Of a stretch of 64,000 nt of DNA, positions 12,802-58,351 are shown in pieces (position 1 is the stretch's first letter; each line of letters opens with the position of its first letter). The stretch is taken from positions 248,001 to 312,000 of IMG/VR virus record IMGVR_UViG_3300046517_002304. One strand, given 5' to 3'. The position numbers and the translations under genes were made by a program. Under the pieces are notes generated by a model. That model made no database searches and was not told the origin of the DNA. It saw only the letters and a program-made list of their open reading frames with translations.

Positions 12802-12949
12802 GGATAACTGCTCCCCGGCTAGTTATCCATATCTTAGGTACAGGGGAAACTATAAGAGTTAATAATTATAGTATCAGTACTTTAGCTATGGATAACTTAG
12901 AGGATCTCCGGGTAACGAAAACAGGGGGGACTTTCCCCCCTAGTTATCC
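12802..12949. repeat. Long intergenic element copy 1 (octamer pair + 77-bp IR-bounded unit + terminator)
   Basis: AGTTATCCATATCTTAGGTAC...TATGGATAACT then G6/C6 hairpin with A-tract. Confidence 0.8.
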
Positions 12950-15355: not shown

Positions 15356-15510
15356 GGATAACTGCGGGGTGGGCTAGTTATCCATATCTTAGGTACGGGG
15401 AGAGTTTTGTTGTACTAGGATTTAACTAGTAGGTACCTAAGATATGGATAACTCTGGCGGTACGTGGCGAAAAGAAAAAACGCTCCCGTTTCGGGGAGCG
15501 TTAGTTATCC
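15356..15510. repeat. Long intergenic element copy 2 (perfect 21-bp IR, 15376-15396 / 15433-15453)
   Basis: AGTTATCCATATCTTAGGTAC and exact reverse complement; terminator at 15475-15502. Confidence 0.85.
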
Positions 15511-15521: not shown

Positions 15522-15890
15522 CTATCGCAGATACTCGGGACCGTATTCGTTCATCCGTCCCATGCCCTTGCTGACGTCGTAGATGTTTCCTCTGGCGTGC
15601 TTCGCGGGGGCTTTCCACGTTGCGGGTTTCAGAATGTCGCCGTTGGCCTTGACGATGAAAGCGAAAGCTGAACCCCTGCAATCTCTGGCCCGTTCGCTGG
15701 CCCGCGATTTCCAGATGCGGACGTATTTGTTGCCGGGATCTTGGATCAACTCCTCCCGCTCCAGGGTCGGGAAGTGAGCCGCCATGTATTCATCAATTTT
15801 CTTCTGGTTATCCGCAACCCATTCCGTCAGTCGCTTCTGAAAGGTCGCGGCCTGTTCGTCGGCATGTCGCTGCAATTCGGCGGCATCCAT
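15522..15890 (-). CDS. Phage hypothetical protein (GDILKPATWKAPAKHARGNI motif)
   Basis: SD CAGGAG; motif familiar from T4-like phage hypotheticals. Confidence 0.75.
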   Translation of the reverse strand: MDAAELQRHADEQAATFQKRLTEWVADNQKKIDEYMAAHFPTLEREELIQDPGNKYVRIWKSRASERARDCRGSAFAFIVKANGDILKPATWKAPAKHARGNIYDVSKGMGRMNEYGPEYLR

Positions 15891-16320
15891 TGTATACTCC
15901 TGAGTAAGGTTGACAATGGGGAATGGATAACTAGCTGACCCGCACCAAGGCCCCACCGTTGCGAATGTCATGCCACGCGAAGCGAATGCCGTGCCGATCC
16001 AAAAATTCGGCGAAGCGAATTGCTCCCAGCGGGTGATTGAACAGGAACGAACGACCGATCCGACGAAAGCTAAGTTTATCCATCTGAGTTATCCTCTTGA
16101 GGAAAATGGACTCACTCTGGATTACGGATAACTAAACGTGCGGCATGTCGTGTGGAGTCAGTATTGCCCACCGGGCTAGGTGGTCCCGCTCCCAGTCTAT
16201 ACGCCGAACGCCTAGTTATAAAAACGAATGGATAACTAAGCAAGTGAGGACGCCAAAATCGTTTTGTCCCTTTCGGAAGATTGCCGATCTGGCTATGTCT
16301 CTTGCCTAGTTATCCGTAGC

Positions 16321-16518
16321 TTAGTTCTGGCGATACTTCGCAATCGCCGAGGCCATCGCGTCGTCAACGGTGCTGCCAGCGGCTACTGCTTCGCGGGTTT
16401 CGCTGAAGATTTTGCTGAGGTCAAACATCATCACCTCAACGCCGTTCCCAAGGCGGCTGTAGGCGTTGTCAATGCTGTCGTCCAACTGCTTTTCGGCTTT
16501 CGTCCTACGTTTCGCCAC
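16321..16518 (-). CDS. Hypothetical protein
   Basis: GTG start with ACAGGAG SD. Confidence 0.65.
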   Translation of the reverse strand: MAKRRTKAEKQLDDSIDNAYSRLGNGVEVMMFDLSKIFSETREAVAAGSTVDDAMASAIAKYRQN

Positions 16519-16561
16519 GATACTCTCCTGTAAGGGGTGACTGATGAGAGTTAAAGGATAA

Positions 16562-16849
16562 CTAGCCGACAGTGAACAGCGGTCGGGTGTATTCCGCCAT
16601 GACCGCCTTATCACTCTGGCGAACGATACGGGCAGCGGAAACTGTCGTCGGGCCGAGATGTTTGTTGCCGCCGGTGCGAGTTGATTCCTCAAAAGCAGCG
16701 ACGTATTTCCGCAAGTTATCCGCAGTCGGTTGACCGTCGCCAGGGACTTGCTCTTGCGGCGATTTTCGCAGTCGCCATTCGCAAGGCGTGTAGATGAAGC
16801 CGGGAACCTTAATCTCAACCGTGAAAGGAATCGCTCTTGATCGTCCCAT
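16562..16849 (-). CDS. Hypothetical protein
   Basis: SD ACAGGAG; stop in octamer. Confidence 0.75.
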   Translation of the reverse strand: MGRSRAIPFTVEIKVPGFIYTPCEWRLRKSPQEQVPGDGQPTADNLRKYVAAFEESTRTGGNKHLGPTTVSAARIVRQSDKAVMAEYTRPLFTVG

Positions 16850-16884
16850 GATAATCTCCTGTTAAGACAGGGAGAAATGGATAA

Positions 16885-17094
16885 CTATTCGCTGATTGTT
16901 TGCGTGTAGGGGATTTCCCCTAATGATTGGAGAATTTCCTCCGCAAGCACATTGCCGGCGTCAGCTCTGAGTTTCAACCCGCCGGCGATCAAGGCAAGTT
17001 TTCCGAGCGACAGGCCAGTAATTTCGTAAAGGTCGTACGCTCCCTTGATTAGTCCCTTAGTTTTCGTCAGTCCTAGCTTTTGCCCTTTCTTCAT
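16885..17094 (-). CDS. Hypothetical protein
   Basis: SD ACAGGAG; stop in octamer. Confidence 0.7.
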   Translation of the reverse strand: MKKGQKLGLTKTKGLIKGAYDLYEITGLSLGKLALIAGGLKLRADAGNVLAEEILQSLGEIPYTQTISE

Positions 17095-17271
17095 GGTATC
17101 TCCTGTGAGAGAAAATTATAAGACTGCCCGTGTTTTCGTCCGCGACAGCACCGCAATGCCGCCAACTGCCTCACCGACCGTTGCCGGGTAATCCGTGGTC
17201 TAGAACACACGACGTTCTACTTCCACGGGCCAGGTTTAGGAGCCTGTTGTCTTACGGTCGGATATGGATAA

Positions 17272-17463
17272 CTAGATGATCGGCATTGAAACCGTGCTGC
17301 CCTTGATTTCCGTGTCAACGATCTTGATATGATTGTTCGGACAATCCAAAGTGAAATTGTAGTCACAATCGGTCGCTGCCATATCGCCCGCGACTTCAGG
17401 TGAAAATACGTGCGGGTGTTCAATGTCAACCGCGACGACAAAGTAAACGCGGGATTTCAGCAT
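17272..17463 (-). CDS. Hypothetical protein
   Basis: SD AAGGAG; stop in octamer. Confidence 0.7.
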   Translation of the reverse strand: MLKSRVYFVVAVDIEHPHVFSPEVAGDMAATDCDYNFTLDCPNNHIKIVDTEIKGSTVSMPII

Positions 17464-17472
17464 GACGCTCCT

Positions 17473-17850
17473 TTATTCGTTTGAGTAACTCAAATCGTCG
17501 CTTGGCTGAAGTTGATTCCAGATATGCCCGCAATTTTCGCATGATTCACCATGCAACGCGGACTCAGGAATCGGCTCTTGACAGTCGGGACATTCGCCCT
17601 TATCATATTCGTTTCGGACGAGATCAGACGGAACCCAAGTCAGACGTTTGGGGAATGGTTTTTTATCACGGAAGCAAAGGATTCGTAAATCGCCCGATGC
17701 CTGACTTTTTGCAGAGGCAAGCGTAGGTGCCCAGTCCTGCCGATTAGTCCCGACTTTGTAACTCCAAAATGGAACAATGCCAGGCGTAGCAATCGGTTGC
17801 TGCCAGATTGTGCATTCGTAGTTCAGGTGTTTGGCGGTATACTGGAGCAT
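17473..17850 (-). CDS. Protein with C-terminal CxxC-CxxC zinc ribbon
   Basis: CPDC...CENC; ATG 10 nt after octamer. Confidence 0.7.
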   Translation of the reverse strand: MLQYTAKHLNYECTIWQQPIATPGIVPFWSYKVGTNRQDWAPTLASAKSQASGDLRILCFRDKKPFPKRLTWVPSDLVRNEYDKGECPDCQEPIPESALHGESCENCGHIWNQLQPSDDLSYSNE

Positions 17851-17860
17851 ACGATTTAAT

Positions 17861-18003
17861 GGATAACTCATCGCCGCCTAGTTATCCATATCTTAGGTAC
17901 GCAGAGAGTTTTGTTGTACTAGGATTTAACTAGTAGGTACTCTAGCTATGGATAACTAGACCTATCAGCTAGGCCAAAAAAATTGGCCCGGGTTTTCCGG
18001 GCC
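17861..18003. repeat. Long intergenic element copy 3
   Basis: 78-bp unit 17880-17957 near-identical to 15376-15453; terminator hairpin follows. Confidence 0.85.
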
Positions 18004-18282
18004 TTGTCCTATTCACCTTGCAGGTTATCCCCCTGATAAGCGGCGTAGCTCTTCTCATCGTGCCAAGTCAGCTTGACCGCACGGCAGGTCGTGAAATCGT
18101 GGTTCCAGAAAAAATCGTAATAGCGGGGGGTGAGATTTCGGTGTTCCCCGCGAGCAAATTGCTCCGCAGTGAATTCAATCATACCGGTTATCCTTTTAAT
18201 CGGGTGAAACTTACAACCGATTACGGATAACTAGAATGACCCTCCCTAGGTATCACTAGGGAGGGTCGGAGGGACGAACGCA

Positions 18283-18753
18283 TCAGGCAGCGGACTTGTC
18301 GGTCTTCTTCTTCGCGGGTTTCTTCGCAGCGACGGCTTTCGTCTTCGCGGCACGCGGCTTGCGGGGTTTGGCGGGTTTCGGGGTTTCGGCGACAGGTGCC
18401 GGCGGTTCAGGGGCGAGCGGTTCAACGGTCGGGGCGTCGTCCACCACAACGGCAGGCTTTCGCTTGCGTTGACGCGGGGCGGTCGGAAGGGCGACGGATT
18501 CGCCAACGGTCGGGATGATCTTTTCGCAGTCCAGTTGCACGCGGACACAATCGGTATCGTGATAGACTTCCAGCACCTTGCACTGAATGCCCATCCAGAC
18601 AGCGGCGGCCAGGCGGAAGAGATTCAGTCGGCCCTTATGGTCGCGGGACAACTCAACGCCGGTGATCGTGGTATCCTTTCGGTCACGAAACTTCAACTGC
18701 GGTTCTACCACCACTTCGCGGGGCTTTTCCTGTTCCTCAACTTCCATACGCAT
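18283..18753 (-). CDS. Protein with Pro/Lys/Ala-rich histone-like tail
   Basis: KPAKPRKPRAAKTKAVAAKKPAKKK. Confidence 0.7.
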   Translation of the reverse strand: MRMEVEEQEKPREVVVEPQLKFRDRKDTTITGVELSRDHKGRLNLFRLAAAVWMGIQCKVLEVYHDTDCVRVQLDCEKIIPTVGESVALPTAPRQRKRKPAVVVDDAPTVEPLAPEPPAPVAETPKPAKPRKPRAAKTKAVAAKKPAKKKTDKSAA

Positions 18754-18933
18754 CGCATACTCCTTAGAGAAGGGGGATTGTTGATTGTTAAGGGATAACT
18801 AACGCCAGTTAGGTGCCACTTCGGTCAACTGGACTACCTCGCACTCTATAGGACTTCGCGGGTGCATGGACGGTCGCAGGCGATTTCAACAGGCCCGCGT
18901 GCGTCTCGGTTAGTTACAACAATGAATGGATAA

Positions 18934-19122
18934 CTAGAAGCTGGATTTTCGTTCGTCCTGAGGCTTCGGCGGCATCGTCAGGCCATCCTGAAAAATCGCC
19001 CGACTTCGCAGCCATTGCAGCATTCCCTTCCAGCGTTCGGGGGGGATATGGTCGGGGCAACCGAAATCGTATCTGGTACATACCAGAAACGAATCAAGGT
19101 TCATTTTGCTGCAATCAATCAT
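18934..19122 (-). CDS. Hypothetical protein
   Basis: Octamer-bounded ORF. Confidence 0.55.
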   Translation of the reverse strand: MIDCSKMNLDSFLVCTRYDFGCPDHIPPERWKGMLQWLRSRAIFQDGLTMPPKPQDERKSSF

Positions 19123-19173
19123 AATACTATCAAACGGATAACTTAGTTGTTAGCTAGTTATCCGTAGCTTGTG

Positions 19174-19404
19174 TCAGTTGCCGTAAGCAAGGCCCATAGC
19201 AATCAACTCTTCGGCCACGCGCCGGGAAATCCGCAGCGCTCCGACATTGCCATTACGAACAATCGTGAGCTGAGGCCGACAACCATGAAACAAGTTGATA
19301 GTTGGCCGATGATCCGCTTTGGGAAGATTTCGGACTTTGCCGTCAATGCTGCCCTTCGGGAGCAACTCAGCAGCAGAGAAATCGGGGAGTTTACTTTTCG
19401 ACAT
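19174..19404 (-). CDS. Hypothetical protein
   Basis: ORF in co-directional cluster. Confidence 0.65.
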   Translation of the reverse strand: MSKSKLPDFSAAELLPKGSIDGKVRNLPKADHRPTINLFHGCRPQLTIVRNGNVGALRISRRVAEELIAMGLAYGN

Positions 19405-19413
19405 TTTGACCTT

Positions 19414-19698
19414 TCATTCGTAAGATGGAATCTCTTCGTCAATCAGATAATTGCGGCAAAGTTTCAAGGCGTCAATCGCGTTGTCCCGTTCGTTTCGCCA
19501 GAATTTGAGGACTTGCCGCTTGGCATTCTCTGCCGTCAAAAACCAGTAGCCAGTGCCGGCACCCTCTGCATGAGCTATCTGGCCGTTGTCAAAAACTACA
19601 ATCTCTTGATCGTCGTCAATGAGAATGTCTTTATAACAGAGGCCGATGGCACAGCAGTTTTGTTCAACCCATCCGTATACTCGGACTTGCTTGCTCAT
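19414..19698 (-). CDS. Hypothetical protein
   Basis: Follows octamer pair. Confidence 0.7.
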   Translation of the reverse strand: MSKQVRVYGWVEQNCCAIGLCYKDILIDDDQEIVVFDNGQIAHAEGAGTGYWFLTAENAKRQVLKFWRNERDNAIDALKLCRNYLIDEEIPSYE

Positions 19699-19749
19699 AA
19701 TGATTGCTAATGGATAACTAGTTGCCCGCTAGTTATCCATAGCTAGGTT

Positions 19750-19971
19750 TCAATGGATGTGAGTCTGGGACTTAAGTATGATGTCCTGATTTTCCTGTGC
19801 GGTCGCAACGCCCGTCAGAAGTCGGGTAGTGTAGATGACGACGTATCGCGGTTCGCCAGTCATACTATCGTGAGGCAGGTCAATCACTTGCATGCTTTCG
19901 CCAGGGTCAAGATTGCCAAGCAACTCAACCATTGCGTCGTGATTCCGACAGTGATAAACGGCGACAAGCAT
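19750..19971 (-). CDS. Hypothetical protein
   Basis: AAGGA SD supplied by an inverted octamer. Confidence 0.65.
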   Translation of the reverse strand: MLVAVYHCRNHDAMVELLGNLDPGESMQVIDLPHDSMTGEPRYVVIYTTRLLTGVATAQENQDIILKSQTHIH

Positions 19972-19994
19972 TGTGAGTTATCCTTTACTAAAAT

Positions 19995-20068
19995 TGGGGA
20001 TGCTAGGACTCGAACCTAGGACCAAAAAATTATGAGTTTTCTGCTCTGACCAACTGAGCTACACCCCC
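19995..20068 (-). tRNA. tRNA with CAT anticodon (elongator Met or Ile2)
   Basis: Cloverleaf: GGGGGTG/CATCCCC acceptor, CTCATAA loop, GGTTCGAGTCC T-arm; CCA not encoded. Confidence 0.9.
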
Positions 20069-20074
20069 GGTGAT

Positions 20075-20533
20075 TTACGCCGCTCCCGCGACCTTACCCC
20101 GACACTCGGGACCGAAACCTGATTCAATACTCTCGGGAACCGTCAACGTCTTGAGGCAACGCCCGCACCTGCCAGCGTTATGCAACTTGAAACCAGCCGC
20201 CTCAATCGCAGCCGTATCGCCCGCCCATACGCGAGCCAGCACGCGATTAATCAATTTGAACGTCATTGAATCCTTTGTGAATTTTGACAGCTTCGTAATC
20301 GTGACTTCGCCGGTGAAAGCATTGACCTTGCCTACGTCGCTGTAATCCCGTATATTTTCGGGACCAGTCAACTTGCCGACCCACCAAGCCTCCGGAAATT
20401 CTGCCGTTGCTTCCGAATAGTTCACGCGATACGTATAATGAGGCTTGCAGCCGTGTTTCGCCGCGAATTCAGCGGGCAACTCAAGAGTAAAAATTGCCTT
20501 GCCAGCGAGGACGAATTCTTTTGTAATCATCAT
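20075..20533 (-). CDS. DUF6011-like zinc-binding protein
   Basis: CGRC..TLTVPESIESGFGPEC. Confidence 0.7.
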   Translation of the reverse strand: MMITKEFVLAGKAIFTLELPAEFAAKHGCKPHYTYRVNYSEATAEFPEAWWVGKLTGPENIRDYSDVGKVNAFTGEVTITKLSKFTKDSMTFKLINRVLARVWAGDTAAIEAAGFKLHNAGRCGRCLKTLTVPESIESGFGPECRGKVAGAA

Positions 20534-20634
20534 ACACTCCTGTTTTATAATTGACAGAAGGGTAGGGATAACTAAAAGACTCTACGCGGCAGTAGTTCCC
20601 ATGGGCGGGCCTTACCGCGTCAGAGTCCAAAACA

Positions 20635-21027
20635 TCACGCAACCGACGACGACCGCAACCGAGCGACTTCGTTGACGTAGGCAGCGGCTTCCGTATCAAC
20701 CGAAAGATACTCCAGAATTTTCTTGTTGACGATGAACGGAGCAACTCCGACGAATTCCCCGACGTATCCCCGAATCGCCGTGCTATACTTTCCGCAGAGC
20801 GAAAGGGCAACGTGATTGAAGGGGGAAACCTTGCGGTTGAGGATGACTTCATCATCCGACCGCCCGCCGAATCCCAAGGCGCGGGCCTCATTCGCCCGAT
20901 TCTGTTTGTCCTTCAGCAAGTCCAGACGAACCTGAGCCATTGCGACATTCGCCGCTGCCTTTGACTGCTGTTTGGCCGACTTCGGCTGAGTCATGCGAAT
21001 ATGAAGCGTCTTTTCGGTCTTCGCCAT
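20635..21027 (-). CDS. Hypothetical protein
   Basis: SD ACAGGAG. Confidence 0.75.
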   Translation of the reverse strand: MAKTEKTLHIRMTQPKSAKQQSKAAANVAMAQVRLDLLKDKQNRANEARALGFGGRSDDEVILNRKVSPFNHVALSLCGKYSTAIRGYVGEFVGVAPFIVNKKILEYLSVDTEAAAYVNEVARLRSSSVA

Positions 21028-21097
21028 AACTTCTACTCCTGTTTAAGAATTGCCTTGACGAATGAGAATGGATAACTACACTAGCGAAAGTTATCCA

Positions 21098-21334
21098 CTA
21101 TTTCGGCGGTCCCTGATTTTTTACTTCGTCCTGCCACGTTGCTTGCTGCCATTCGTGGCTGAAATCTTCGCAAGCCGCTTCCATCTCGGTGATGACTTCG
21201 CGGCAGGCATCGGTCACACTTACGGCAGCGGCACTATCACGATACCGCTCTTGAATCAATTTTCCCAAAGCACGGCGGGTCACATTGCCGCGATTAAATC
21301 TGAGAATGAGAGCCTCAAGAAATTCATCCATCAT
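21098..21334 (-). CDS. Hypothetical protein
   Basis: ATGA-coupled. Confidence 0.65.
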   Translation of the reverse strand: MMDEFLEALILRFNRGNVTRRALGKLIQERYRDSAAAVSVTDACREVITEMEAACEDFSHEWQQATWQDEVKNQGPPK

Positions 21335-21618
21335 ACCCCCTCTACGGATAACTCAGGTTTTTTGAATTTTACCAACTCGGGAAACAACTCAGTCGCTTGT
21401 GTCGGTTGGCCGAATTTGACCGCTCGTAAAATTGCTCTTGACGGCGGGCCAGTCCATCGCCTCCAATGTGATTTGTCGATACGGTTTAACTCAACCGCCC
21501 GTACCCATTGCCCGCCGATCTTAACCGCTCCATCGTATGAACCGACAAAGCTATAATAATTGGCGTCAGAATTCCGTATGCTTCTGGAAATCGTCTTGCC
21601 TAGGTCGTAGTTGGGCAT
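21331..21618 (-). CDS. Hypothetical protein
   Basis: ATG 10 nt after octamer. Confidence 0.65.
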   Translation of the reverse strand: MPNYDLGKTISRSIRNSDANYYSFVGSYDGAVKIGGQWVRAVELNRIDKSHWRRWTGPPSRAILRAVKFGQPTQATELFPELVKFKKPELSVEGV

Positions 21619-21635
21619 GGAGTTTAAGGGATAAC

Positions 21636-22217
21636 TCAGTGTCTCTTTGCCTTGGCACGAAGATAGGCGTCTTCCCACGCATACGCCTCTTCTGCCGTGA
21701 CCGTGCCGCCGATTGCATTGAACATTGCATTCAGCTTGCGATTGTATTCAGCAGCATGCCGACGAACAACGGCAGGATTTGCCTCACCGTCGCAATGCAG
21801 AGTCTCGGGTTCAAGTGCCGCATAGCAAGCAACGATTGCCGCCATGATAGCCTTATCAATATTGGATTGCAGAATCGGATGGAAAACCGAATTTGCTGGT
21901 TGAACGCGACCGACCCCGAGCAACTTCATTGCGTCAACCGTCGCAACGTCAGCGGCGGTCAGCGTCACCTTTTCGCGGGGAGTTTCGGTCTTCTGCGAAG
22001 TAACCCGAGCAACGTCTGCCTCTGTTGCGGGAGTAAGCATTTCATAAGGGACAACCCAAATTGACCCTACTTCGCTGCCACGCCCGTACCCGCGTTGCTC
22101 CAATATGCGAACTTTCGCTTTGACGCGGTTACGCTTGAAAATTTTAGCGATAGTCCTTTGACCATTTTCGCGGCCAAAGCTCACCGGCATTCCGTCGTAT
22201 GCTTGTTCGTAATTCAT
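21636..22217 (-). CDS. Hypothetical protein (LEPETLHCDGE motif)
   Basis: ATG 10 nt after octamer; stop in octamer. Confidence 0.75.
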   Translation of the reverse strand: MNYEQAYDGMPVSFGRENGQRTIAKIFKRNRVKAKVRILEQRGYGRGSEVGSIWVVPYEMLTPATEADVARVTSQKTETPREKVTLTAADVATVDAMKLLGVGRVQPANSVFHPILQSNIDKAIMAAIVACYAALEPETLHCDGEANPAVVRRHAAEYNRKLNAMFNAIGGTVTAEEAYAWEDAYLRAKAKRH

Positions 22218-22227
22218 ATTTGCCAAT

Positions 22228-22368
22228 GGATAACTCATCGCCGCCTAGTTATCCATATCTTAGGTACGTAGCAGATATTGTTGTACTAGGATTTTCTAAT
22301 GTTGTACTCTAGTTATGGATAACTGGCCAGGACTACAGGCCAAAAAATTAGCCCCCGTTTAGCCGGGG
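22228..22368. repeat. Long intergenic element copy 4
   Basis: First ~40 bp identical to copy 3; 78-bp unit 22247-22324; terminator. Confidence 0.85.
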
Positions 22369-22600
22369 GAACGCTGACGCTCATTAGCCGCGAGCGACGA
22401 CAGCAAGGTGTAAGGGATAACTCAGTCAAACAAATCCCGCTTTGCCTGATAGCCGTCATCTTCCGGCCCCCAGGTATTTTCGCAGTTGCCGTGTTCGTCA
22501 ATGTAACGAATCACGCCAGTAAGGTCAAGCTGAAGACAACCGCCGTCTTCCATTTCCAACTCTTGCATAATCAGGACTCCTTTAATTGTTAAGGGATAAC

Positions 22601-22789
22601 TCAGACGGGAACGTGAATGAATTCAATCGTTACGTGCTGGCGGGCAAATCTTCGGGCTTCCTCAATCGCCTCTAGTAAGTTATGATTAGAAGCGATTCCA
22701 AGCATTACGCCCCCTTCGTCGCGGGGAGCATTGCCGAAAATGTCATACCCTCTATAATCATTCGCTTGCACGTAAATCGCCGTAATCAT
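22601..22789 (-). CDS. Hypothetical protein
   Basis: Coupled; stop in octamer. Confidence 0.65.
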   Translation of the reverse strand: MITAIYVQANDYRGYDIFGNAPRDEGGVMLGIASNHNLLEAIEEARRFARQHVTIEFIHVPV

Positions 22790-23451
22790 TTTTCACCACC
22801 TACAAGAGACAGCAGCAATTCGGCGACGGCATTGTTTGTGAAGCGGGTAAGTTTCAAGTCCCTGATCGTGTTGACTCGGGGCTGGCAGTATTCGGCGAAC
22901 GCGGCGGAAATTTCCACAAGCTGATGATTGACTTCAACCAGATTCAACAGGTCGCGGTCAATCGCCTTGATGTATTCCTCTTTCTCGGTGAGTTGCTTCA
23001 CCACTTCAGCAAAAATGCCGTTGTAGCTTCGCCAATCGGGATTGTCCCAATCCTTAGACAAGTAGGTAGAAAGCCTATCGTCGCAACCGATGACCGCCTC
23101 ACGCAAGTAATACTGAGGACCGTCGCCCTTGCTTCGCTCAATCTGTTTGAGCATTTTATTCGACAGCAATTCGGCGGGATAGTAAACTTCACCGCCCCAA
23201 ATTTTGACGCGGACGTTGTAGTTCTCATTCTCCAGAATGACGCTCCACCCCTTGGCGAATGGGTTGTCTGATTTCGCCAAATCGGCCTTGAATTCGCGGA
23301 CCAGCACGTTATCCACACGAACACGATGCTTGATACGGTTCAGGGTGCCGATGAGAATCCCGAGGAGGAAACTTTCAACCTCTGCCACGAGGCGAGCACG
23401 GCGAAGATTCTTTTCGGCTGCAATCGTTTGCGGGAGCGGTGCGAATTCCAT
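22786..23451 (-). CDS. Hypothetical protein
   Basis: SD CAGGAG; 221 aa. Confidence 0.8.
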   Translation of the reverse strand: MEFAPLPQTIAAEKNLRRARLVAEVESFLLGILIGTLNRIKHRVRVDNVLVREFKADLAKSDNPFAKGWSVILENENYNVRVKIWGGEVYYPAELLSNKMLKQIERSKGDGPQYYLREAVIGCDDRLSTYLSKDWDNPDWRSYNGIFAEVVKQLTEKEEYIKAIDRDLLNLVEVNHQLVEISAAFAEYCQPRVNTIRDLKLTRFTNNAVAELLLSLVGGEK

Positions 23452-23491
23452 GGGATACTCCTGAGTAATGTTGACGAAAGTTAAAGGATAA

Positions 23492-23776
23492 CTATTCGCT
23501 CACGTAGACTTTGCCGTGAGCGATGTAGTCCAGTGCCGTCGCCCAATCGCATCGCGGCTCTTCGCAAATGATCGTTGTCTTGCCGTCAAACGTGACCCCG
23601 ACAGAAATCAGTCTATCAGGATTTGTCGGAAGGGCCAGCAGAGTAATATTACGCTGCCGCCACTTGTTGACGGTGGCTCCGATGAGCGGAAGCTGTACGA
23701 TTTCTTCCATGCTCAACGTGGTATTGTTATGAATCTGCATAACGGCCTGATTGTTTGTTTTCATAATGAGCATCAA
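23492..23776 (-). CDS. Hypothetical protein
   Basis: Octamer-bounded ORF. Confidence 0.65.
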   Translation of the reverse strand: MMLIMKTNNQAVMQIHNNTTLSMEEIVQLPLIGATVNKWRQRNITLLALPTNPDRLISVGVTFDGKTTIICEEPRCDWATALDYIAHGKVYVSE

Positions 23777-23872
23777 GGGATAACTGAAAAATTGGCGGGC
23801 CAGCTTGCGTTCAGTATTATCGGGCGTTCCCTAACCTACTAGCAAGCCGTTCCCCGCCGTGAGATCAGTAAT

Positions 23873-23976
23873 GGATAACTAGCTGGCCTCATAGTTATCC
23901 ATATCTTAGGTACAGAGCAATTTTTAATTCTTATAATGAAATAAAAAAACGCCAGCGGGTGATTCCCGCCAGCGTT
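23873..23976. repeat. Long intergenic element copy 5 (single arm) plus terminator
   Basis: GGATAACT-12 nt-AGTTATCCATATCTTAGGTAC. Confidence 0.75.
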
Positions 23977-24197
23977 ATCAAATTCTAGCCCTCAAGGTTC
24001 TAACCTATCTAAACAAACCCCGATGTATAGTATGGCAGGCCGCTCTGCCGGCGCGACGGCACTAGGGAGAATGATGATTGATCTATGCTACATAGTAGGC
24101 TCCGGGCTAGTGGAGCAAAGCATAGCAAAATCAGCAGTGGAAGAAAAATAAACATAATGATTCCGAGGTTTTTGGCAGTTGCACACTATACTAAAGC

Positions 24198-24677
24198 ATG
24201 CAAAAGTTTAACTGCGGGACTTGTGGAAAAGAAGTTTATCGACCGACTTGGAGAATCAAAAAATGTTTAACTGGCATTTTTTACTGTAGCCAGAAATGTT
24301 GCTGTGATGCTAATAACAAAAAAAAGGCGGATCAGGTTAGTGGTATGAGAAAAGGCGAAGTACTAAACCACTGTTCCACGTCCAGTAGGTTCGCAACGAT
24401 ACGGAAAAATGCTAGGCGAACATACCTTGCGTCAGACAAACCTAAGTGCTGCCTAGTATGCGGGTATTCTAAGCATATTGAAATTTGCCATGTTCAGGGG
24501 ATTACAACATTCCCCGATGAGACGAAGTTAATCGTTATCAACGATCTGACAAATCTCGTTGCTTTATGTCCGACCCATCATTGGGAGTTAGACAATAAGC
24601 AGCTTGACGAAGAAATACTCCCGGAAAGATTCGCACTTTCGACCCCCGGGTTAGAAACCCGATGCTCTATCTGCTGA
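24198..24677 (+). CDS. HNH endonuclease with N-terminal Cys-rich zinc finger
   Basis: CLVC...EICHV...NLVALCPTHH; antisense to surrounding genes. Confidence 0.8.
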   Translation: MQKFNCGTCGKEVYRPTWRIKKCLTGIFYCSQKCCCDANNKKKADQVSGMRKGEVLNHCSTSSRFATIRKNARRTYLASDKPKCCLVCGYSKHIEICHVQGITTFPDETKLIVINDLTNLVALCPTHHWELDNKQLDEEILPERFALSTPGLETRCSIC

Positions 24678-24688
24678 GCTACGAGAGC
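24616..24688 (-). tRNA. tRNA-Arg(TCT)
   Basis: Cloverleaf: GCTCTCG/CGGGAGT acceptor, TTTCTAA loop; atypical T-loop TGCGAAT. Confidence 0.85.
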
Positions 24689-24744
24689 AACTGACAGACA
24701 ACAATGGATAACTCAGGAGTTCCTGAGTTATCCTTACCTGAAAT

Positions 24745-24957
24745 TCAAGCGACAACTTTTCCGTGTCTGATCCAGTCCAGTTCGCCACCGAAACACGATA
24801 CGGATGAACCGTCAGGAAAAGCCACTAAGTAATGAGCACGATTTGACATCATTTTCTTGCTCTTCACGCGACCAACCTTGTTGGTTCGCTCATAGAGCAC
24901 CGGGTCACCGACATTATGCTCGGGAACGAATTCCGCACGATAGCCAACAGACTTCAT
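24745..24957 (-). CDS. Hypothetical protein
   Basis: SD ACAGGAG before MKSVGY. Confidence 0.65.
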   Translation of the reverse strand: MKSVGYRAEFVPEHNVGDPVLYERTNKVGRVKSKKMMSNRAHYLVAFPDGSSVSCFGGELDWIRHGKVVA

Positions 24958-25006
24958 AATCGTTGCTCCTGTAGAGTTGTGGACTTGATGCCTGTTAAGG
25001 GATAAC

Positions 25007-25297
25007 TCAGGATTCGGTGGAATGAACAATCAGGATATAGCTCTGACTCTCTTCCGGCGATGAACCAGCAACGTAAAATTGCCCGTCCATCAGGCAGTCC
25101 TCAAATTCGTCGGGAGTCATCACGTTTTCAATGCCGGGGGACGATTCTTTCGCCCACTTCAGGAATAGCTCTTCCGCTTGGCTATTCCCATCCTTATCGT
25201 CGGGGAAGGATGCCAGCTTGTCTACAACTGACTTATCGCTCACCCAAATCACGTTGACGGTTTTAAGCACGGCAATTACTCCAAAAGAAAAGACCAC
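25007..25297 (-). CDS. Hypothetical protein
   Basis: Stop in octamer. Confidence 0.6.
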   Translation of the reverse strand: MVFSFGVIAVLKTVNVIWVSDKSVVDKLASFPDDKDGNSQAEELFLKWAKESSPGIENVMTPDEFEDCLMDGQFYVAGSSPEESQSYILIVHSTES

Positions 25298-25394
25298 CCG
25301 CCACTCCCTGTAAACTCACAATGAGCACCTGAGGGTTTAGGCAGAATGGGTCGTATTATATGGACCGCTTAGCATGCAAGGTTAAGGGATAACT

Positions 25395-25677
25395 GTGTCC
25401 GCTGGTTTTATCTCTTGCTTTCATCGCAACGGGGATACGTTATCCAATAGCGTTGCAGTCATTACGACAAGCCTATTATCCAACTGTCATCACAATTTAG
25501 CAAGGCTCCAACCTTGGATTTAGCCATCGGCACCTACGACGATGGACTTACAGGACTCCAACTGCCTCTAGATTTCACCCGCTCCGCGAGAGCTATTCGG
25601 ATTCACTGGCTCTAGACGCCCAATGTTAAAGCCGCTTCATCGCATTGCGATACCTCACGACTTCAACACTGTATCAT
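25395..25677 (-). ncRNA. Candidate structured ncRNA
   Basis: Octamer-bounded, no long ORF, several complementary helices. Confidence 0.4.
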
Positions 25678-25878
25678 GGATAACTACTTGCGCTTCCGGC
25701 GACCGACGTTCAACAGCGTGCGGTCCTCAAATCCGAGTTTCACGCCATGAACGCGACACACCTGAGCCACCGCTTGAATGAGCTGACGGCCCTGTTCCGA
25801 TTTTGTCGGCTTGCAACTTTTCGCCATGACTCTATTCTCCAGAATGGAAATTGATTTGTCTGATTGACAATGGATAAC

Positions 25879-26148
25879 TCAGCCGCGATTGTCCTCTTGC
25901 CCCTCAACCAACATTGCGGGGACAGTGATGCGACCAGTCAGCATGCCCATCATCGCCCGCCGTGGTGCCGCATAGGTTTCGTAATCAATGCTCAACGCTG
26001 GCGTAGCGACTACCAGATCGGTGCGAGTGACGTAGAAGTATTTCGGGTATTTCAGAGGATTGAAATTGAAGAACGTCTGAAATTGTTCAAGCGTGCGGCT
26101 GGCGTTGCGGTAAACGTAGCCAGAGGCTCTGAGTACTTCAGGATTCAT
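25879..26148 (-). CDS. Hypothetical protein
   Basis: AAGGA SD; stop in octamer. Confidence 0.7.
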   Translation of the reverse strand: MNPEVLRASGYVYRNASRTLEQFQTFFNFNPLKYPKYFYVTRTDLVVATPALSIDYETYAAPRRAMMGMLTGRITVPAMLVEGQEDNRG

Positions 26149-26178
26149 AATCGGTTCCTTTAATTACTAAAGGATAAC

Positions 26179-26442
26179 TCAGCCGCGAAGATACAGCCGT
26201 TCACCCTTCACGATGACGTAGCAACTGCCGGCGTTGCTGTAGCAGATACAGTAAACGCGATACAGCTTCGTATCGCCGTTGAAGCGGAGCATTTTGTCAG
26301 TGCTGATTTTGCTACCGTAGCCGTCTTCCCCTTGCCCTGGGGCTAACTGAAGCATACCACGGCGAGGAACAGGCCGCTCAATCAACTCATAGTTGTCGGC
26401 GTATGTAATCGCCGGGCCACAAGATCCAGAGAGGATAGACAT
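26179..26442 (-). CDS. Phage hypothetical protein (GYG.KI.T...RVYCICYSNAGS motif)
   Basis: SD GGAG; stop in octamer. Confidence 0.75.
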   Translation of the reverse strand: MSILSGSCGPAITYADNYELIERPVPRRGMLQLAPGQGEDGYGSKISTDKMLRFNGDTKLYRVYCICYSNAGSCYVIVKGERLYLRG

Positions 26443-26525
26443 TGAATACTCCGGTGATTTGTAAGGGGGATTTACATCATGGCGACTGTCGAACCCGCCG
26501 CGATAACCCCCAGATGCAGGACGAT

Positions 26526-26722
26526 GGATAACTAGCTGCCCCCATAGTTATCCATAGCTAAGGTACGGACTATCATTTAGATTCCCCTGCTAGTTATCCA
26601 TAGCTAAGGTACGGAACAATACTAGGATGCCCCCGTTAGTTATCCATAGCTTAGGTCCGGCCGAACATAGCTGGGGCCAGTCGAAATAAAAAATGCCCCT
26701 CAGCCAATCAAGGCTGAGGGGA
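26526..26722. repeat. Three direct repeats TAGTTATCCATAGCT(A/T)AGGT at 46-bp period, plus terminator
   Basis: Octamers at 26546, 26592, 26638. Confidence 0.85.
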
Positions 26723-26801
26723 CTAACTAAGGCGGGACATTATGCCCGCAATCGTGGAGGTCCGCCAATCAGGCGGGCCAGTTGAGTCTAACTATGGATA
26801 A

Positions 26802-27590
26802 CTATTCGTCGCTCTCTTCCCATTCTTCATCCCGAGCAACTTCAGCCGTTGCCGTGCTCCGCCCCGGTGCCGCTGTCTTTTCTACCGTAATATAATTCAG
26901 GACACGCATAGACCGCGTATCGCGGACATACTCTAGGTTTCGCTCCTGTTGTAATTCGTGCGGTAGCTTGGCGTATGACGACGGGTAGAGGGAGGGGTCC
27001 AATACCCAAACGGTTTCGGCCTCCAATCCCTTAGCTTTATGCGTCGTCGTCAACAATACCGCGTGCTTTACGTCGCCGGCGTCATTGACTTCCGCGAAGA
27101 TACTGCTAATTAATTCCTTCAACGCTTTCGCAGTATCGGTCCCCTCAGTCAGAGCGATGAGAGTATCGCATTTATCATTAAGAGTTTCCGCCGCACGACC
27201 CGCATTTTTCCGCTTTTCCAGTTTCGTCAACTCCCGACCGCGATATGTTTCAATCCGTTCAATGAGAGTCGGGATATCGTCGGTCTTCATCCGATCAATC
27301 AGATTGATGAGGCCCTCCCCAAAATCGTTGCGGCCTGCAATCTGGACTTTGAGATGACGCCTCAGAAGTTTCCAGACAAGCGTTGCAAGGGGAGCATTGT
27401 TCCGACATTGAACCATATCCCCTGGGGCAATCAAATCAATCGCCGCTGCCAGAGGCATCGTATTGACTTCCCCCTGAGGGGCTGATGCCATTGCTTCAAA
27501 GGCAGGAACGAACGCCTGAGCAATTTCAACGTGCGACTTCGGGCACCGTCGCGTCTTCGTCAGCGTCAAGAGAGTCAAGCCGCGAGACAT
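26802..27590 (-). CDS. UvrD/Rep-like SF1 helicase, C-terminal part
   Basis: Motifs IV (TRRCP), V (TTHKAKGLE), VI (ERNLEYVRDTRS). Confidence 0.85.
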   Translation of the reverse strand: MSRGLTLLTLTKTRRCPKSHVEIAQAFVPAFEAMASAPQGEVNTMPLAAAIDLIAPGDMVQCRNNAPLATLVWKLLRRHLKVQIAGRNDFGEGLINLIDRMKTDDIPTLIERIETYRGRELTKLEKRKNAGRAAETLNDKCDTLIALTEGTDTAKALKELISSIFAEVNDAGDVKHAVLLTTTHKAKGLEAETVWVLDPSLYPSSYAKLPHELQQERNLEYVRDTRSMRVLNYITVEKTAAPGRSTATAEVARDEEWEESDE

Positions 27591-27639
27591 ACTTGTTATC
27601 CTTTAAAAGTGTGCGGAGTTGATGGAAGTTAAAGGATAA

Positions 27640-28605
27640 CTAGGCGGATAGACGACGCTCAAACAATTGCATAGAATCTTCCGCTGCTCCGCAAAAGCCG
27701 TAGATAGCCTGATTCTCATCGCCCACCGCGATAATCCTGCCATTCTTGCCCGCGACCGTGAACGCCATTTCAATTCGGCACATATTCAGGTCTTGAACTT
27801 CGTCAACCAGCACGTTATCATAAGTCGGCAACGTAATCTTATTGACAATCGGAATCCAAATTTGATCGTCAAAATCAAATTCCCGCGTATTCTTGCGTGC
27901 GGCATCCAAAACCTTTGGAACCAATTCAAAAATCCGCTCTACTTCGTCGCCAATTTCAACGCTATGATATTCGCAGAGTTGCGTCAGATTTTCGGTTGTC
28001 GGTGCCAGCAATTTGTTTTTGCAGAGGGAAACCAACTTGACGACCGCATACTTGATACGGTTTTTATCGTTGTCGTCCATCCCCTCAGGGAGCATTGCAT
28101 CAACGCAATTATGCGTTTTGTATTCCTTCAATTCGGCACCCTTATAGAATGCCCGAATTGCACTCCAGCCGAAAGCATGGAACGTGCTAGTGGCCGTTCC
28201 CTCAGGCATGCGTGCTTTCAACTCTCGGGCGATTTTGTTATTAAACGCCAGAGCGATGACGCTACCAGTGAGGCGGGCGGCACCCATGACAATCGTTGTC
28301 GTCTTGCCCGTTCCCGCCAGTGCTTTGATAATCAGGTGGGAAGTCCCATTCTCCATTTCTTCCCATATCGCAATCTGCTGATCCGACCCCTTAAAGGTGG
28401 GGAGAGGAATTTTCGTAATCACCTCCTTAACATACTTGGCTTTCTGAGTATGTTTGCACTGGACTTCACCGGCGGCCTTATCAAACCCCTCAGGATTACG
28501 GGCCGACTTTTCATAGTAGCCCGGGCAACCATAAAACTTGCCGAAACTACTTTTCCGAGCAACCAGCGTTTTGTCGCACTTAGGGCAGAAATATTCGCTC
28601 ATCAT
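27640..28605 (-). CDS. UvrD/Rep-like SF1 helicase, N-terminal part with topoisomerase-type C4 zinc finger
   Basis: ALAGTGKT, STFH, VDEVQD, VGDENQAIYGF; CPKC...FYGC. Confidence 0.9.
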   Translation of the reverse strand: MMSEYFCPKCDKTLVARKSSFGKFYGCPGYYEKSARNPEGFDKAAGEVQCKHTQKAKYVKEVITKIPLPTFKGSDQQIAIWEEMENGTSHLIIKALAGTGKTTTIVMGAARLTGSVIALAFNNKIARELKARMPEGTATSTFHAFGWSAIRAFYKGAELKEYKTHNCVDAMLPEGMDDNDKNRIKYAVVKLVSLCKNKLLAPTTENLTQLCEYHSVEIGDEVERIFELVPKVLDAARKNTREFDFDDQIWIPIVNKITLPTYDNVLVDEVQDLNMCRIEMAFTVAGKNGRIIAVGDENQAIYGFCGAAEDSMQLFERRLSA

Positions 28606-28999
28606 AATCTTTCAGCAAGGGAATTCAAATCCAGTTGCCGTATTGTGGATAACTATTGCTACCCAATGGCAATTCCGTATCTCGTATCTTAGATACGGAT
28701 AACTATGGGGGAGAGGCGTTCTAACTCTACGCTTTGCCTCTCCCCCGTTTTGCGTCGGCCTCCGCACATTAGGCAGGGATAACTCCCCGACCTGTAACGT
28801 GGCATAAGCGACCCTCCGAGGTGTTACGTCGTAATGAGCGACATCCTACCGGCGTCCACTTATGCCGTGTCTGAATTTTTAGGATTGTTGTAATGCCTCT
28901 TATTCTCCTGCAAGTCAAATGAAGCGACCTCAGTCAAGAATATTTAGCTTGTAATGGTCGCATAGGCCAAGCCACAGCTTCCATAGACTTACAACAATT

Positions 29000-29233
29000 C
29001 TAGGAATTCAGCAAATCCGCAATTTCTTGATTACGGATAACTACTGGTTTCGTGATATCGATGTTGAGGGCGGCTCTTGCCCCTTCCAAGTCACCCTCTT
29101 CTAGATAAAACGTGTCGGCGGCATCAGACAAACCGATATCGACTAGCTGATTAACCAGCTCAGCAACCCGCTTCTTACTCATACGAACGGGAGCGTCAAC
29201 CTTAACCAGCAGATTCACCGTTCGTTTTTTCAT
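29000..29233 (-). CDS. Hypothetical protein
   Basis: Start region is tandemly duplicated. Confidence 0.65.
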   Translation of the reverse strand: MKKRTVNLLVKVDAPVRMSKKRVAELVNQLVDIGLSDAADTFYLEEGDLEGARAALNIDITKPVVIRNQEIADLLNS

Positions 29234-29277
29234 GGTTTTCCTGATGGAGTTCGTTTTTTCATGGTTTTCCTGATGGA
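29220..29277. repeat. Exact 29-bp tandem duplication
   Basis: GTTCGTTTTTTCATGGTTTTCCTGATGGA x2. Confidence 0.9.
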
Positions 29278-29546
29278 TCAGGGATAACTAAGAGAGATGC
29301 CCTATTCGCTTGCTACGTCTTCGGGCTACGATTTTTACTGAAGAGTTCTGCTCTTCGCGGCAAGATTCGTCGGATACGCCTATCTCTCGAGGAACAATGG
29401 ATAACTAATTTGTTCTAGCCGTTATTCAGATTCCCGATTTTCACCGAAAGCCCGCTGATCGGGCGAGCCAAATCCTAGAGCTGGAGGCTTTCGCCCCACG
29501 GTCTCCTAACGACCAGAACGAATTAGTTAAATGAATAGGGATAACT

Positions 29547-29584
29547 AAAAATTGCCGGGGAGGGTCTTGGCAACCCTCCCCGGC
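29547..29584 (-). terminator. Intrinsic terminator
   Basis: GCCGGGGAGGG/CCCTCCCCGGC stem plus T-tract on -. Confidence 0.7.
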
Positions 29585-58248: not shown

Positions 58249-58267
58249 GGTTTTCCTTTATTGTAAG

Positions 58268-58351
58268 TGCCGGAAGAGGGATTTGAACCCACACACCCCG
58301 AAGGATACGACATTTTAAGTGTCGTGCGGCTGCCAATTACGCCATTCCGGC
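58268..58351 (-). tRNA. tRNA-Leu(TAA)
   Basis: GCCGGAA/TTCCGGC acceptor, CTTAAAA loop, long variable arm, TTCAAAT T-loop. Confidence 0.9.

What the first reader, a model, noticed from the sequence alone, without database searches (positions are those of the whole stretch)
16134..29538. Short octamer-bounded non-coding units with strong pairing: a small-RNA set
Seen: several motif-to-motif intervals of ~85-130 nt lack a credible ORF. Some fold back by eye: 23786-23872 (GGCGGG/CCCGCC and GCTTGC/GCAAGC, ending in a U-tract), 29290-29398 (GAGAGAT/ATCTCTC, CTTGC/GCAAG, GAAGAG/CTCTTC) and 29407-29538 (GTTCT/AGAAC, CGAAAGCC/GGCTTTCG, GCCCG/CGGGC). 16134-16229 and 18801-18927 are less clear. Inference: the same unit grammar carries RNA genes, possibly decoy or antitoxin-like small RNAs. 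This argues against a purely translational role for the motif.
Basis: partly seen in the sequence, partly recalled or inferred. Interest (0 to 1): 0.6.

Follow-up and report, generated by a model that had tools for sequence, protein, structure and literature searches.

The report
ORF-less hairpin units in giant phage
In a 511-kb T4-like soil phage, a nine-base signal precedes almost every small gene, and a few signal-to-signal intervals hold no gene; one of the five flagged is clearly a stable hairpin ending in a terminator, one is borderline, and three look like plain spacer, so a "small-RNA set" is only partly supported.

Summary
The window lies in a complete 511,233-bp T4-like phage genome. 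On the minus (gene) strand, TAGTTATCC precedes about 160 small genes in one 170-kb block. All five intervals are bounded by the motif as described, and none looks coding. Every frame on both strands scores at or below 0.06 on codon usage, against +0.37 for local genes, and independent gene callers call nothing in c3-c5.

Folding separates the five. 23787-23872 is exceptional (z -4.2, a long hairpin followed by five U's). 29408-29538 is borderline (z -2.5 to -2.8, about the tenth percentile of local background). 16135-16229, 18802-18927 and 29291-29398 fold no better than shuffled sequence.

There is no Rfam match, no paralogue, no RNA data, no sequence variants and no sequence homologue in relatives, so covariation cannot be tested.

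The idea that the unit grammar can carry RNA genes does hold:
- tRNA-Arg starts 16 nt after a motif copy.
- Stronger ORF-less hairpin units exist at 28705-28776 and 26690-26795.
- Distant relatives (helicase 57% identical) share the octamer and have their own unrelated hairpin-only units.

The best reading is a cassette-type region resembling PeSL promoter/stem-loop cassettes, where the short units are hairpin/terminator punctuation or spacer. Nothing supports decoy or antitoxin roles.

The parts
23787..23872 (-). c3: ORF-less unit. A 14-nt leader is followed by a long imperfect hairpin (about 23794-23858) and then AAUUUUU (U-run 23787-23791). The next octamer follows directly at 23778-23785.
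   Evidence: z -4.15 and -4.21, no shuffle folds as well, and the MFE structure holds 54% of the ensemble. Within the local 1st percentile. No Rfam hit, no paralogue, non-coding codon score.
29408..29538 (-). c5: ORF-less unit with a 13-bp closing helix (about 29507-29519 with 29412-29424) around smaller hairpins. It contains AGGAG, 3 nt, then a GTG-started 25-codon ORF that does not look coding.
   Evidence: z -2.5 to -2.8, but 10% of local windows are as low. The MFE holds only 1% of the ensemble, though the closing helix is kept in the centroid. Micro-ORF codon score -0.05. No Rfam hit at E up to 10.
29291..29398 (-). c4: ORF-less interval.
   Evidence: z -1.0 to -1.2, with 29 of 200 shuffles as good. 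The frame in phase with the motif TAG is open for 38 codons but has no start codon and scores -0.13 on codon usage.
16135..16229 (-). c1: ORF-less interval with no significant structure. Its first ~26 nt (motif plus an ATTC..TAACTA leader) resemble the start of c2.
   Evidence: z -1.5 to -1.6. Best ORF 4 codons. Shared 5' segment in repeat family D10 and in alignment A1.
18802..18927 (-). c2: ORF-less interval that folds worse than its shuffles. A 21-codon ATG ORF without a Shine-Dalgarno sequence ends at the motif TAG.
   Evidence: z +1.0 to +1.1. Frame data; codon scores all negative.
28705..28776 (-). It lies upstream of the helicase gene.
   Evidence: z -4.0 to -4.1, no shuffle as good.
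26690..26795 (-). ORF-less unit just after the helicase C-terminal half: the motif, then three hairpins, the last a canonical terminator (26696-26721 followed by a T-run). It is either an sRNA-like unit or the helicase 3' UTR.
   Evidence: z -4.6. Terminator found. The stop codon of the helicase C-terminal half is the motif TAG at 26802-26804.
22325..22414 (-). ORF-less unit with two hairpins, the second a terminator (22352-22369 plus a T-run). This terminator is a paralogue of the one at 17985-18003, with compensatory stem changes.
   Evidence: The overall z is not significant (0.08).
24615..24689 (-). tRNA-Arg(TCT), starting 16 nt downstream of a motif copy (24706-24714) that forms an inverted pair with 24725-24733.
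   Evidence: ARAGORN and Rfam, 62 bits. Context.
17868..17957 (-). One of four ~90-nt inverted-repeat units (the others are 12809-12897, 15363-15453 and 22235-22324). The motif plus a 13-nt extension pairs with an inverted copy, and a gene-proximal motif follows about 10 nt later.
   Evidence: Repeat families D1-D3 and D8; folds. Arm differences are not compensated, so the conserved 22-mer, not the RNA helix, appears to be under selection.
23873..23881 (-). Example motif copy (TAGTTATCC on the minus strand) at the head of c3. The same signal heads every unit listed here.
   Evidence: 133 exact copies on the gene strand, all within about C1:250-410 kb. The octamer is the only invariant block at an orthologous gap in four phage lineages.

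Best explanation
The five intervals are ORF-less units in a cassette-built, hyperplastic block of a giant T4-like phage.

The nonamer TAGTTATCC acts as a gene-start signal, most likely a compact phage-specific promoter. It sets the start of the functional part about 10-13 nt downstream, whether that part is an ORF, a tRNA or a hairpin.

The short units are heterogeneous.
- c3 is a motif followed by a long hairpin and a U-run. It would give an RNA of about 70-85 nt that is essentially a terminator hairpin. The unlisted units 28705-28776 and 26690-26795 are of the same kind.
- c5 may be a structured RNA.
- c1, c2 and c4 are unstructured spacer or decayed remnants.

I infer that the hairpin units act mainly in cis, as punctuation: they stop or insulate transcription between tandem start signals and stabilise 3' ends. 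This is what the stem-loops of PeSL cassettes do in other T4-like phages. I do not think they are a coordinated set of trans-acting small RNAs.

Shown: the boundaries, the non-coding character, the stability of c3, the conservation of the octamer, and the existence of the same unit type in relatives.

Inferred: that the motif is a promoter, that these RNAs are made, and that they act in cis.
For: - The phage is complete (direct terminal repeats) and T4-like: Gp23 at E 5e-87 and a terminase.
- Motif distribution and strandedness.
- The octamer-to-ATG distance is exactly 10 nt in 46 units and 13 nt in 15 units. Hairpins start 10-20 nt after the motif in most structured units.
- tRNA-Arg starts 16 nt after a motif copy.
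- Terminator hairpins abut 11 of 162 motif copies, against 1.7 at random positions. A duplicated terminator shows compensatory stem changes.
- The octamer is the only invariant block in the helicase gap across four lineages whose helicases are 56-58% identical.
- Relatives have their own hairpin-only units with z from -3.7 to -5.2: L005 1423-1503, 3672-3762 and 3996-4120, and L007 2717-2847.
- Neighbouring genes are ORFans, gene order is scrambled between relatives, and leaders, terminators and inverted-repeat pieces recur as modules.
- PeSL cassettes are described in PMC2839356 and PMC4122927.
- Non-coding status.
- Fold statistics.
Against: - There is no transcript evidence of any kind. No RNA run holds the region.
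- The motif is not sigma-70-like and has no conserved -35 partner. No phage RNA polymerase was detected, only two sigma-like ORFs, so the promoter role is inferred.
- In 55-68% of copies the motif TAG is the in-frame stop of the upstream gene. The 13-nt class has an AAGGA-like Shine-Dalgarno sequence right after the motif. Upstream transcripts must therefore read into the motif, which also fits an RNA-level role such as a processing site or translational coupling.
- Only 7% of motif copies have a canonical terminator just upstream.
- The hairpins of c3-type units have much larger loops than the canonical terminators here, which could mean the loops themselves are functional.
Confidence: 0.5

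Rival explanations
1. Trans-acting phage small RNAs. Each short unit would be an independent small-RNA gene whose loops pair with, or decoy, host or phage factors.
For: - c3, 28705-28776 and 26690-26795 have the classic layout of start signal, stem-loops and terminator, and are very stable.
- Their loops (18-36 nt) are larger than those of ordinary terminators here.
- Relatives keep this unit type although the sequences differ.
- tRNA-Arg shows that the grammar does drive an RNA gene.
Against: - Three of the five show no structure signal.
- No Rfam family matches.
- No paralogues and no significant antisense matches in the genome.
- No sequence conservation in relatives.
- No expression data.
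- No repeat array or toxin-like neighbour for an antitoxin role.
Confidence: 0.17
2. Decayed cassettes or spacers. The intervals would be remnants left by gene loss or by recombination at motif copies, with no function of their own. Any hairpins would be leftover terminators of lost genes.
For: - c1, c2 and c4 fold like shuffled sequence and do not look coding.
- c4 is open in phase with the motif TAG for its whole length but has no start codon. c2 keeps a 21-codon ORF ending at the TAG. Both are compatible with 3' gene fragments.
- The region is modular, with scrambled gene order between relatives.
- The units are singletons and are not conserved.
Against: - The codon scores of c2 and c4 in those frames are negative.
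- The phage is otherwise tightly packed.
- c3-type hairpins are exceptionally stable and recur as a type in relatives.
- PeSL-type excision would leave a single junction, not an empty unit (PMC2839356).
Confidence: 0.23
3. Micro-ORFs. The units would encode very short peptides, for example the 25-codon GTG ORF in c5 behind AGGAG, or the 21-codon ORF in c2 that ends at the motif TAG.
For: In c5, AGGAG lies 3 nt before a GTG placed about 40 nt after the motif, within the 25-56-nt range typical of long-leader units. The c2 ORF ends exactly at the motif TAG.
Against: - Codon scores are -0.05 for c5 and negative for c2, far below real genes.
- The 3-nt spacing after the Shine-Dalgarno sequence is short.
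- None of the five has an ATG at the canonical 10- or 13-nt distance.
- Gene callers skip these intervals.
Confidence: 0.05
4. DNA-level elements. The hairpin-forming sequences and the inverted motif pairs would be protein-binding or recombination sites (operators, iteron-like arrays, cassette junctions) rather than RNA genes.
For: - The 22-mer (motif plus a 13-nt near-palindrome) is conserved in sequence in 10 copies, while differences between the arms are not compensated.
- Three tandem 46-nt repeats lie at 26535-26680.
- L005 has a palindrome next to its motif copies that shares TACCTAAG.
Against: This fits the inverted-repeat units, not the five flagged singletons, which share no sequence. 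The c3 U-run is strand-specific, as expected for an RNA terminator.
Confidence: 0.05

Closest known systems
PeSL (promoter-early stem-loop) regulatory cassettes of T4-like phages (PMC2839356, PMC4122927)
   Same: - A T4-like phage, with a hyperplastic block of small ORFan genes.
- A short conserved start signal before each gene, often next to a stem-loop terminator.
- Modular reuse of leaders and terminators, and gene order scrambled between relatives.
   Different: - PeSL promoters are sigma-70-like, with -35 and -10 elements and an AT-rich upstream region. Here the signal is a nonamer with no -35 partner.
- Its spacing to the ATG is fixed at 10 or 13 nt, and its TAG often serves as the stop codon of the upstream gene.
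- Only 7% of copies have a canonical terminator next to them.
- Recombination between copies could not be observed, because all contigs are identical.
Small stable RNAs C and D in the tRNA region of phage T4 (my own knowledge, not checked with a tool)
   Same: Short non-coding RNAs of unknown function, encoded among tRNA genes and small early genes of a T4-type phage. Here tRNA-Met and tRNA-Arg lie in the same 12-30 kb stretch.
   Different: No sequence or model comparison was possible. Rfam gives no hit for the candidates. The T4 RNAs are processed from the tRNA precursor, whereas these candidates would be separate units.
Intrinsic (Rho-independent) terminators
   Same: c3 has G+C-rich stems followed by a run of five U's on the gene strand. 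26696-26721 and 22352-22369 are canonical examples.
   Different: The c3 hairpin is about 65 nt, with internal loops and a 36-nt apical region, instead of a 3-8-nt loop. c1, c2, c4 and c5 have no stem followed by a U-run.
Type III toxin-antitoxin RNA antitoxins (ToxI-like)
   Same: Only that they are small non-coding RNAs encoded by phages or mobile elements.
   Different: No tandem ~36-nt repeats inside the units, and no ToxN-like gene nearby.

Membership tests
Any Rfam RNA family | Covariance-model score at or above the family's gathering threshold | tested here: not met
   Only three tRNAs pass in the window. Permissive scans at E up to 5 or 10 over 11000-32000, 29270-29560 and 23770-24720 give nothing for the candidates.
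tRNA | Cloverleaf detected by ARAGORN or by Rfam RF00005 | tested here: not met
   The tRNAs lie at 19995-20068, 24615-24689 and 58267-58351 only, none of them in the five intervals.
PeSL cassette | Located in a hyperplastic ORFan region of a T4-like phage | tested here: met
   Gp23 at E 5e-87. The neighbours are ORFans in Pfam and PHROGs.
PeSL cassette | Sigma-70-like promoter (-35 and -10 hexamers with an AT-rich upstream region) | tested here: not met
   Information content is confined to the nonamer plus a T two bases downstream, with nothing upstream. Sigma-70-like sites number 29, against 20.2 +/- 5.3 expected, and do not coincide with the motif.
PeSL cassette | Stem-loop terminator directly adjoining the promoter | tested here: inconclusive
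   11 of 162 copies have a canonical terminator within 14 nt upstream, against 1.7 at random positions. About 10 more have an inverted motif copy that forms a hairpin. Most copies have neither.
PeSL cassette | Recombination between cassettes that produces indels or mini-circles | not testable with these tools
   All contigs from six runs and three loci are identical to the window.
Intrinsic terminator | G+C-rich stem, short loop, and a U-run within a few nt on the transcribed strand | tested here: inconclusive
   c3 has the stem and UUUUU but a very large apical region, so the consensus scan misses it. The other four lack these features.
Type III antitoxin RNA (ToxI-like) | Tandem direct repeats of about 34-36 nt next to a ToxN-type endoribonuclease gene | tested here: not met
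   No internal repeats in the candidates. No such domain in the neighbouring proteins.
Integron attC / gene cassette | Imperfect inverted core sites (RYYYAAC ... GTTRRRY) bounding each recombination site | tested here: not met
   The units are bounded by direct, not inverted, copies. The motif matches the core-site consensus only in GTT. An integrase was not searched for.

The most novel reading that the evidence does not exclude
A clade of giant T4-like soil phages uses one nonamer as a universal gene-start signal that fixes a 5' end about 10 nt downstream. That would give leaderless or near-leaderless mRNAs, a tRNA, and a previously undescribed class of promoter-flush, terminator-ended hairpin RNAs. 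Under this reading c3, 28705-28776, 26690-26795 and the L005/L007 units have functional loops, for example as decoys for host factors.
Probability: 0.15. Interest if true: 0.7.

Novelty: new variant of a known kind. Interest (0 to 1): 0.38.

Why it matters
If the hairpin units are transcribed, they would be among the first small RNAs described for giant T4-like soil phages. They would also show that one very short start signal serves protein genes, a tRNA and non-coding RNAs alike. That would make the signal a handle for annotating transcription units in uncultured huge phages. As it stands, the practical value is narrower. The five intervals should be annotated as non-coding. Only c3 is a confident structured element, and better candidates lie nearby at 28705-28776 and 26690-26795. 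The set should not be treated as one RNA family.

Tried and rejected
- **Rfam:** gathering thresholds and permissive E-values gave nothing.
- **Paralogues and antisense targets in the 511-kb genome:** blastn-short and tblastx found only self hits and 13-18-nt chance matches.
- **Relatives by DNA pattern in viral contigs:** searches with the 22-mer and with three spaced motif copies found nothing. The terminase found only a fragment of the same phage.
- **Relatives by helicase:** three contigs at 56-58% identity share the octamer grammar but no DNA similarity outside the helicase, so no covariation test was possible. tblastx hits to the tRNA-Met region were spurious, since ARAGORN finds no tRNA there.
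- **Variant strains:** cluster members and their contigs are 100% identical over window 17640-38605. Laid contigs from four runs show no differences or joints.
- **RNA evidence:** no RNA run holds the stretch.
- **'Each short unit is one unit-spanning hairpin':** not better than shuffles (mean span 0.73 against 0.70, p 0.28). Rejected.
- **Alternative genetic code or suppressor:** the genome has only 4 tRNAs, none a suppressor, so no other code was used.
- **Literature search for the motif:** only primer coincidences.
- **Not used:** the large profile protein search, structure prediction and complex prediction. The question is about non-coding DNA, and peptides of 21-38 residues would have no power there.

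Full report
**Context.** The window is C1:248001-312000 of a 511,233-bp virus record with direct terminal repeats, rated complete. The record encodes a T4-type major capsid protein (Pfam Gp23, E 5e-87) and a large terminase, so it is a giant T4-like phage. Six soil and rhizosphere DNA runs hold it, and no RNA run does.

**The motif.**
- The genome has 133 exact copies on that strand, all between about 250 and 410 kb. Only 14 lie on the other strand, all in window 12-27 kb.
- The window has 143 matches with at most one mismatch, against 12 expected.
- Conservation covers the nine bases plus a T two positions downstream. Nothing upstream is conserved.
- The TAG is the in-frame stop of the upstream ORF in 55-68% of copies.
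- The distance from the octamer to the ATG of the next ORF is exactly 10 nt in 46 units and 13 nt in 15. The 13-nt class carries an AAGGA-like Shine-Dalgarno sequence. In the 50%-GC stretch at 12-30 kb, leaders of 25-55 nt with ACAGGAG are used instead.

**Check of the observation.** All five intervals are bounded by the motif at the stated coordinates.
- The best minus-strand ORFs are 4-26 codons.
- A codon-usage score trained on 30 local genes gives +0.365 per codon for true 35-codon segments (10th percentile 0.167) and -0.55 out of frame. All five intervals score at or below 0.06 in all six frames.
- JGI and Logan gene callers on identical contigs call nothing in c3, c4 or c5.

'No credible ORF' is therefore confirmed.

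| Interval | Coordinates (minus strand) | z-score | Shuffles folding as well |
|---|---|---|---|
| c3 | 23787-23872 | -4.15 / -4.21 | 0 of 300 and 0 of 200 |
| c5 | 29408-29538 | -2.5 to -2.8 | 0-3 |
| c1 | 16135-16229 | -1.5 | 23 of 300 |
| c4 | 29291-29398 | -1.0 to -1.2 | 29 of 200 |
| c2 | 18802-18927 | +1.0 | 259 of 300 |

- The c3 fold is a single dominant structure holding 54% of the ensemble.
- Plus-strand folds are weaker in every case.
- The local background matters. For 180 windows of 100 nt on the same strand at 12-30 kb, z has mean -0.67 and sd 1.39. Ten percent of these windows reach -2.8 and one percent reach -4.15.
- c3 is therefore exceptional and c5 is borderline. c1, c2 and c4 are ordinary.

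**Searches for identity.**
- Rfam gives only the three tRNAs, even at E up to 10 on small slices.
- The five are singletons in the genome, with no significant antisense matches.
- c1 and c2 share only their first ~26 nt, which is the motif plus a leader.

**Relatives.** The UvrD-like helicase next to c4 and c5 is split into two ORFs by a motif copy.
- Its N-terminal half has three relatives at 56-58% identity, on contigs L005, L006 and L007 from three other samples.
- In all three the helicase is split at the same place, and AGTTATCC is the only invariant block in the gap.
- The octamer recurs 31, 11 and 7 times on the gene strand of those contigs.
- The grammar is therefore old and under selection.
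- Outside the helicase there is no DNA similarity, so the five intervals have no homologues and covariation cannot be tested.
- Contigs of the same phage from other samples are identical.

**What the comparison does show.**
- L005 and L007 have their own ORF-less, motif-bounded hairpin units. L005 1423-1503 has z -5.2, 3672-3762 has -3.8 and 3996-4120 has -4.5. L007 2717-2847 has -3.7. Each ends in a U-rich tail just before the next octamer.
- In the window itself, two unlisted units are at least as good as c3. 28705-28776 has z -4.1. 26690-26795 has z -4.6, with three hairpins of which the last is a canonical terminator.
- tRNA-Arg starts 16 nt after a motif copy.
- The unit grammar does carry RNA elements, which weakens a purely translational reading of the motif.
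- A tested generalisation failed. 'Every short unit is one unit-spanning hairpin' is not better than shuffles.

**Modularity.**
- Four ~90-nt units are long inverted repeats of the motif plus a 13-nt near-palindrome: 12809-12897, 15363-15453, 17868-17957 and 22235-22324. Differences between their arms are not compensated, so the 22-mer sequence rather than an RNA helix seems to be selected.
- A 150-nt module (a terminator plus an inverted-repeat unit) is duplicated at 18001-17858 and 22367-22225. The two outer stem pairs of the terminator are flipped on both arms.
- Two gene leaders are 81% identical over 48 nt.
- Neighbouring proteins are ORFans, and gene order differs between relatives.
- This is the picture described for PeSL cassettes of T4-like phages (PMC2839356, PMC4122927), except that the start signal here is not sigma-70-like.
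- No phage RNA polymerase was found, only two sigma-like ORFs. The control for the T7-type family matched nothing in any genome, so its absence here is not shown.

**Mechanism.** I take the nonamer to be a compact gene-start signal, most likely a promoter.
- For: the fixed 10/13-nt spacing, tRNA-Arg, the hairpin units, and terminators abutting 11 of 162 copies against 1.7 at random positions.
- Against: the in-frame TAG stops and the Shine-Dalgarno sequences directly after the motif show that upstream transcripts read into it. An RNA-level role, such as a processing site or termination-reinitiation coupling, therefore remains open.
- Under either role, c3-type units would yield short hairpin RNAs. 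I judge a cis punctuation role (termination, insulation, 3'-end protection) more likely than trans regulation, because the units are unconserved singletons.
- c1, c2 and c4 are best treated as spacer or remnants.
- Nothing supports decoy or antitoxin functions.

**Verdict.** This is a new variant of a known kind (PeSL-like cassettes with ORF-less hairpin units) and of moderate-to-low interest until transcripts are mapped.

Noticed in passing
whole motif block, window 2600-64000 and on to about C1:410 kb: The distance from the octamer to the ATG of the next ORF is exactly 10 nt in 46 units and 13 nt in 15 of 162. The 10-nt class has no Shine-Dalgarno sequence, which suggests leaderless or very short-leader mRNAs.
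   Followed up: partly
all motif copies on the minus strand: The TAG of the motif is the in-frame stop codon of the upstream ORF in 55-68% of copies, well above one third. In relative L005 many copies read TAAGTTATCC instead, with a TAA stop overlapping the octamer.
   Followed up: partly
motif versus L009 806-814 (E. coli rrsB): The plus-strand form GGATAACTA is identical to E. coli 16S rRNA nt 147-155, so the RNA form of the motif is complementary to that segment. The chance of this is about 1% and the host is unknown. It may be coincidence.
   Followed up: no
window 26802-28605 (minus); L005 1931-3672; L006 866-2620; L007 982-2717: A UvrD-like helicase is split into N-terminal and C-terminal ORFs at the same point in four phage lineages. 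The octamer is the only invariant block in the ~50-nt gap.
   Followed up: yes
window 12809-12897, 15363-15453, 17868-17957, 22235-22324; also 26535-26680: A 22-mer (the motif plus a 13-nt near-palindrome) occurs about 10 times, mostly in the opposite orientation. It forms ~20-bp inverted repeats, and once three tandem 46-nt repeats. This looks like an operator or iteron.
   Followed up: partly
L005 1400-1420, 1845-1865, 3965-3985, 5450-5480 and others: Relative L005 has a palindrome (GATACCTAAGAA ... TTAGGTATC) 5-12 nt upstream of many octamers. It shares TACCTAAG with the window's 22-mer, which makes this a second conserved element of the grammar.
   Followed up: no
window 17858-18001 versus 22225-22367: A 150-nt module (a terminator plus an inverted-repeat unit) is duplicated at 83% identity. 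The two outer pairs of the terminator stem are flipped G-C to C-G on both arms, which is compensatory change.
   Followed up: partly
window 1-64000; genome in 20-kb bins: GC content jumps to 50% at window 12-30 kb and then declines (44, 42, 40, 39%) toward the 38% genome average. Motif density falls in parallel, from 36 copies per 20 kb to 4.
   Followed up: no
window 28606-29547 and L005 1209-1931: In two lineages the 0.7-0.95 kb upstream of the helicase holds five or six motif copies with almost no coding sequence and many hairpins and terminators. This may be a regulatory region for the helicase.
   Followed up: partly
window 29233-29290: A ~28-nt tandem duplication covers the ribosome-binding site and the first codons of the 77-aa ORF 29000-29233.
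   Followed up: no
window 15886-15933 versus 23447-23494: Two unrelated genes share an 81% identical 48-nt leader (motif, GTCAAC box, Shine-Dalgarno sequence, first codons), so the 5' UTR behaves as a portable module (family D14).
   Followed up: no
G000 C1:457773-457982 and C1:95464-95604: Two sigma-70 region-2-like ORFs (219 and 161 aa open frames) are candidates for the factor that reads the nonamer.
   Followed up: no
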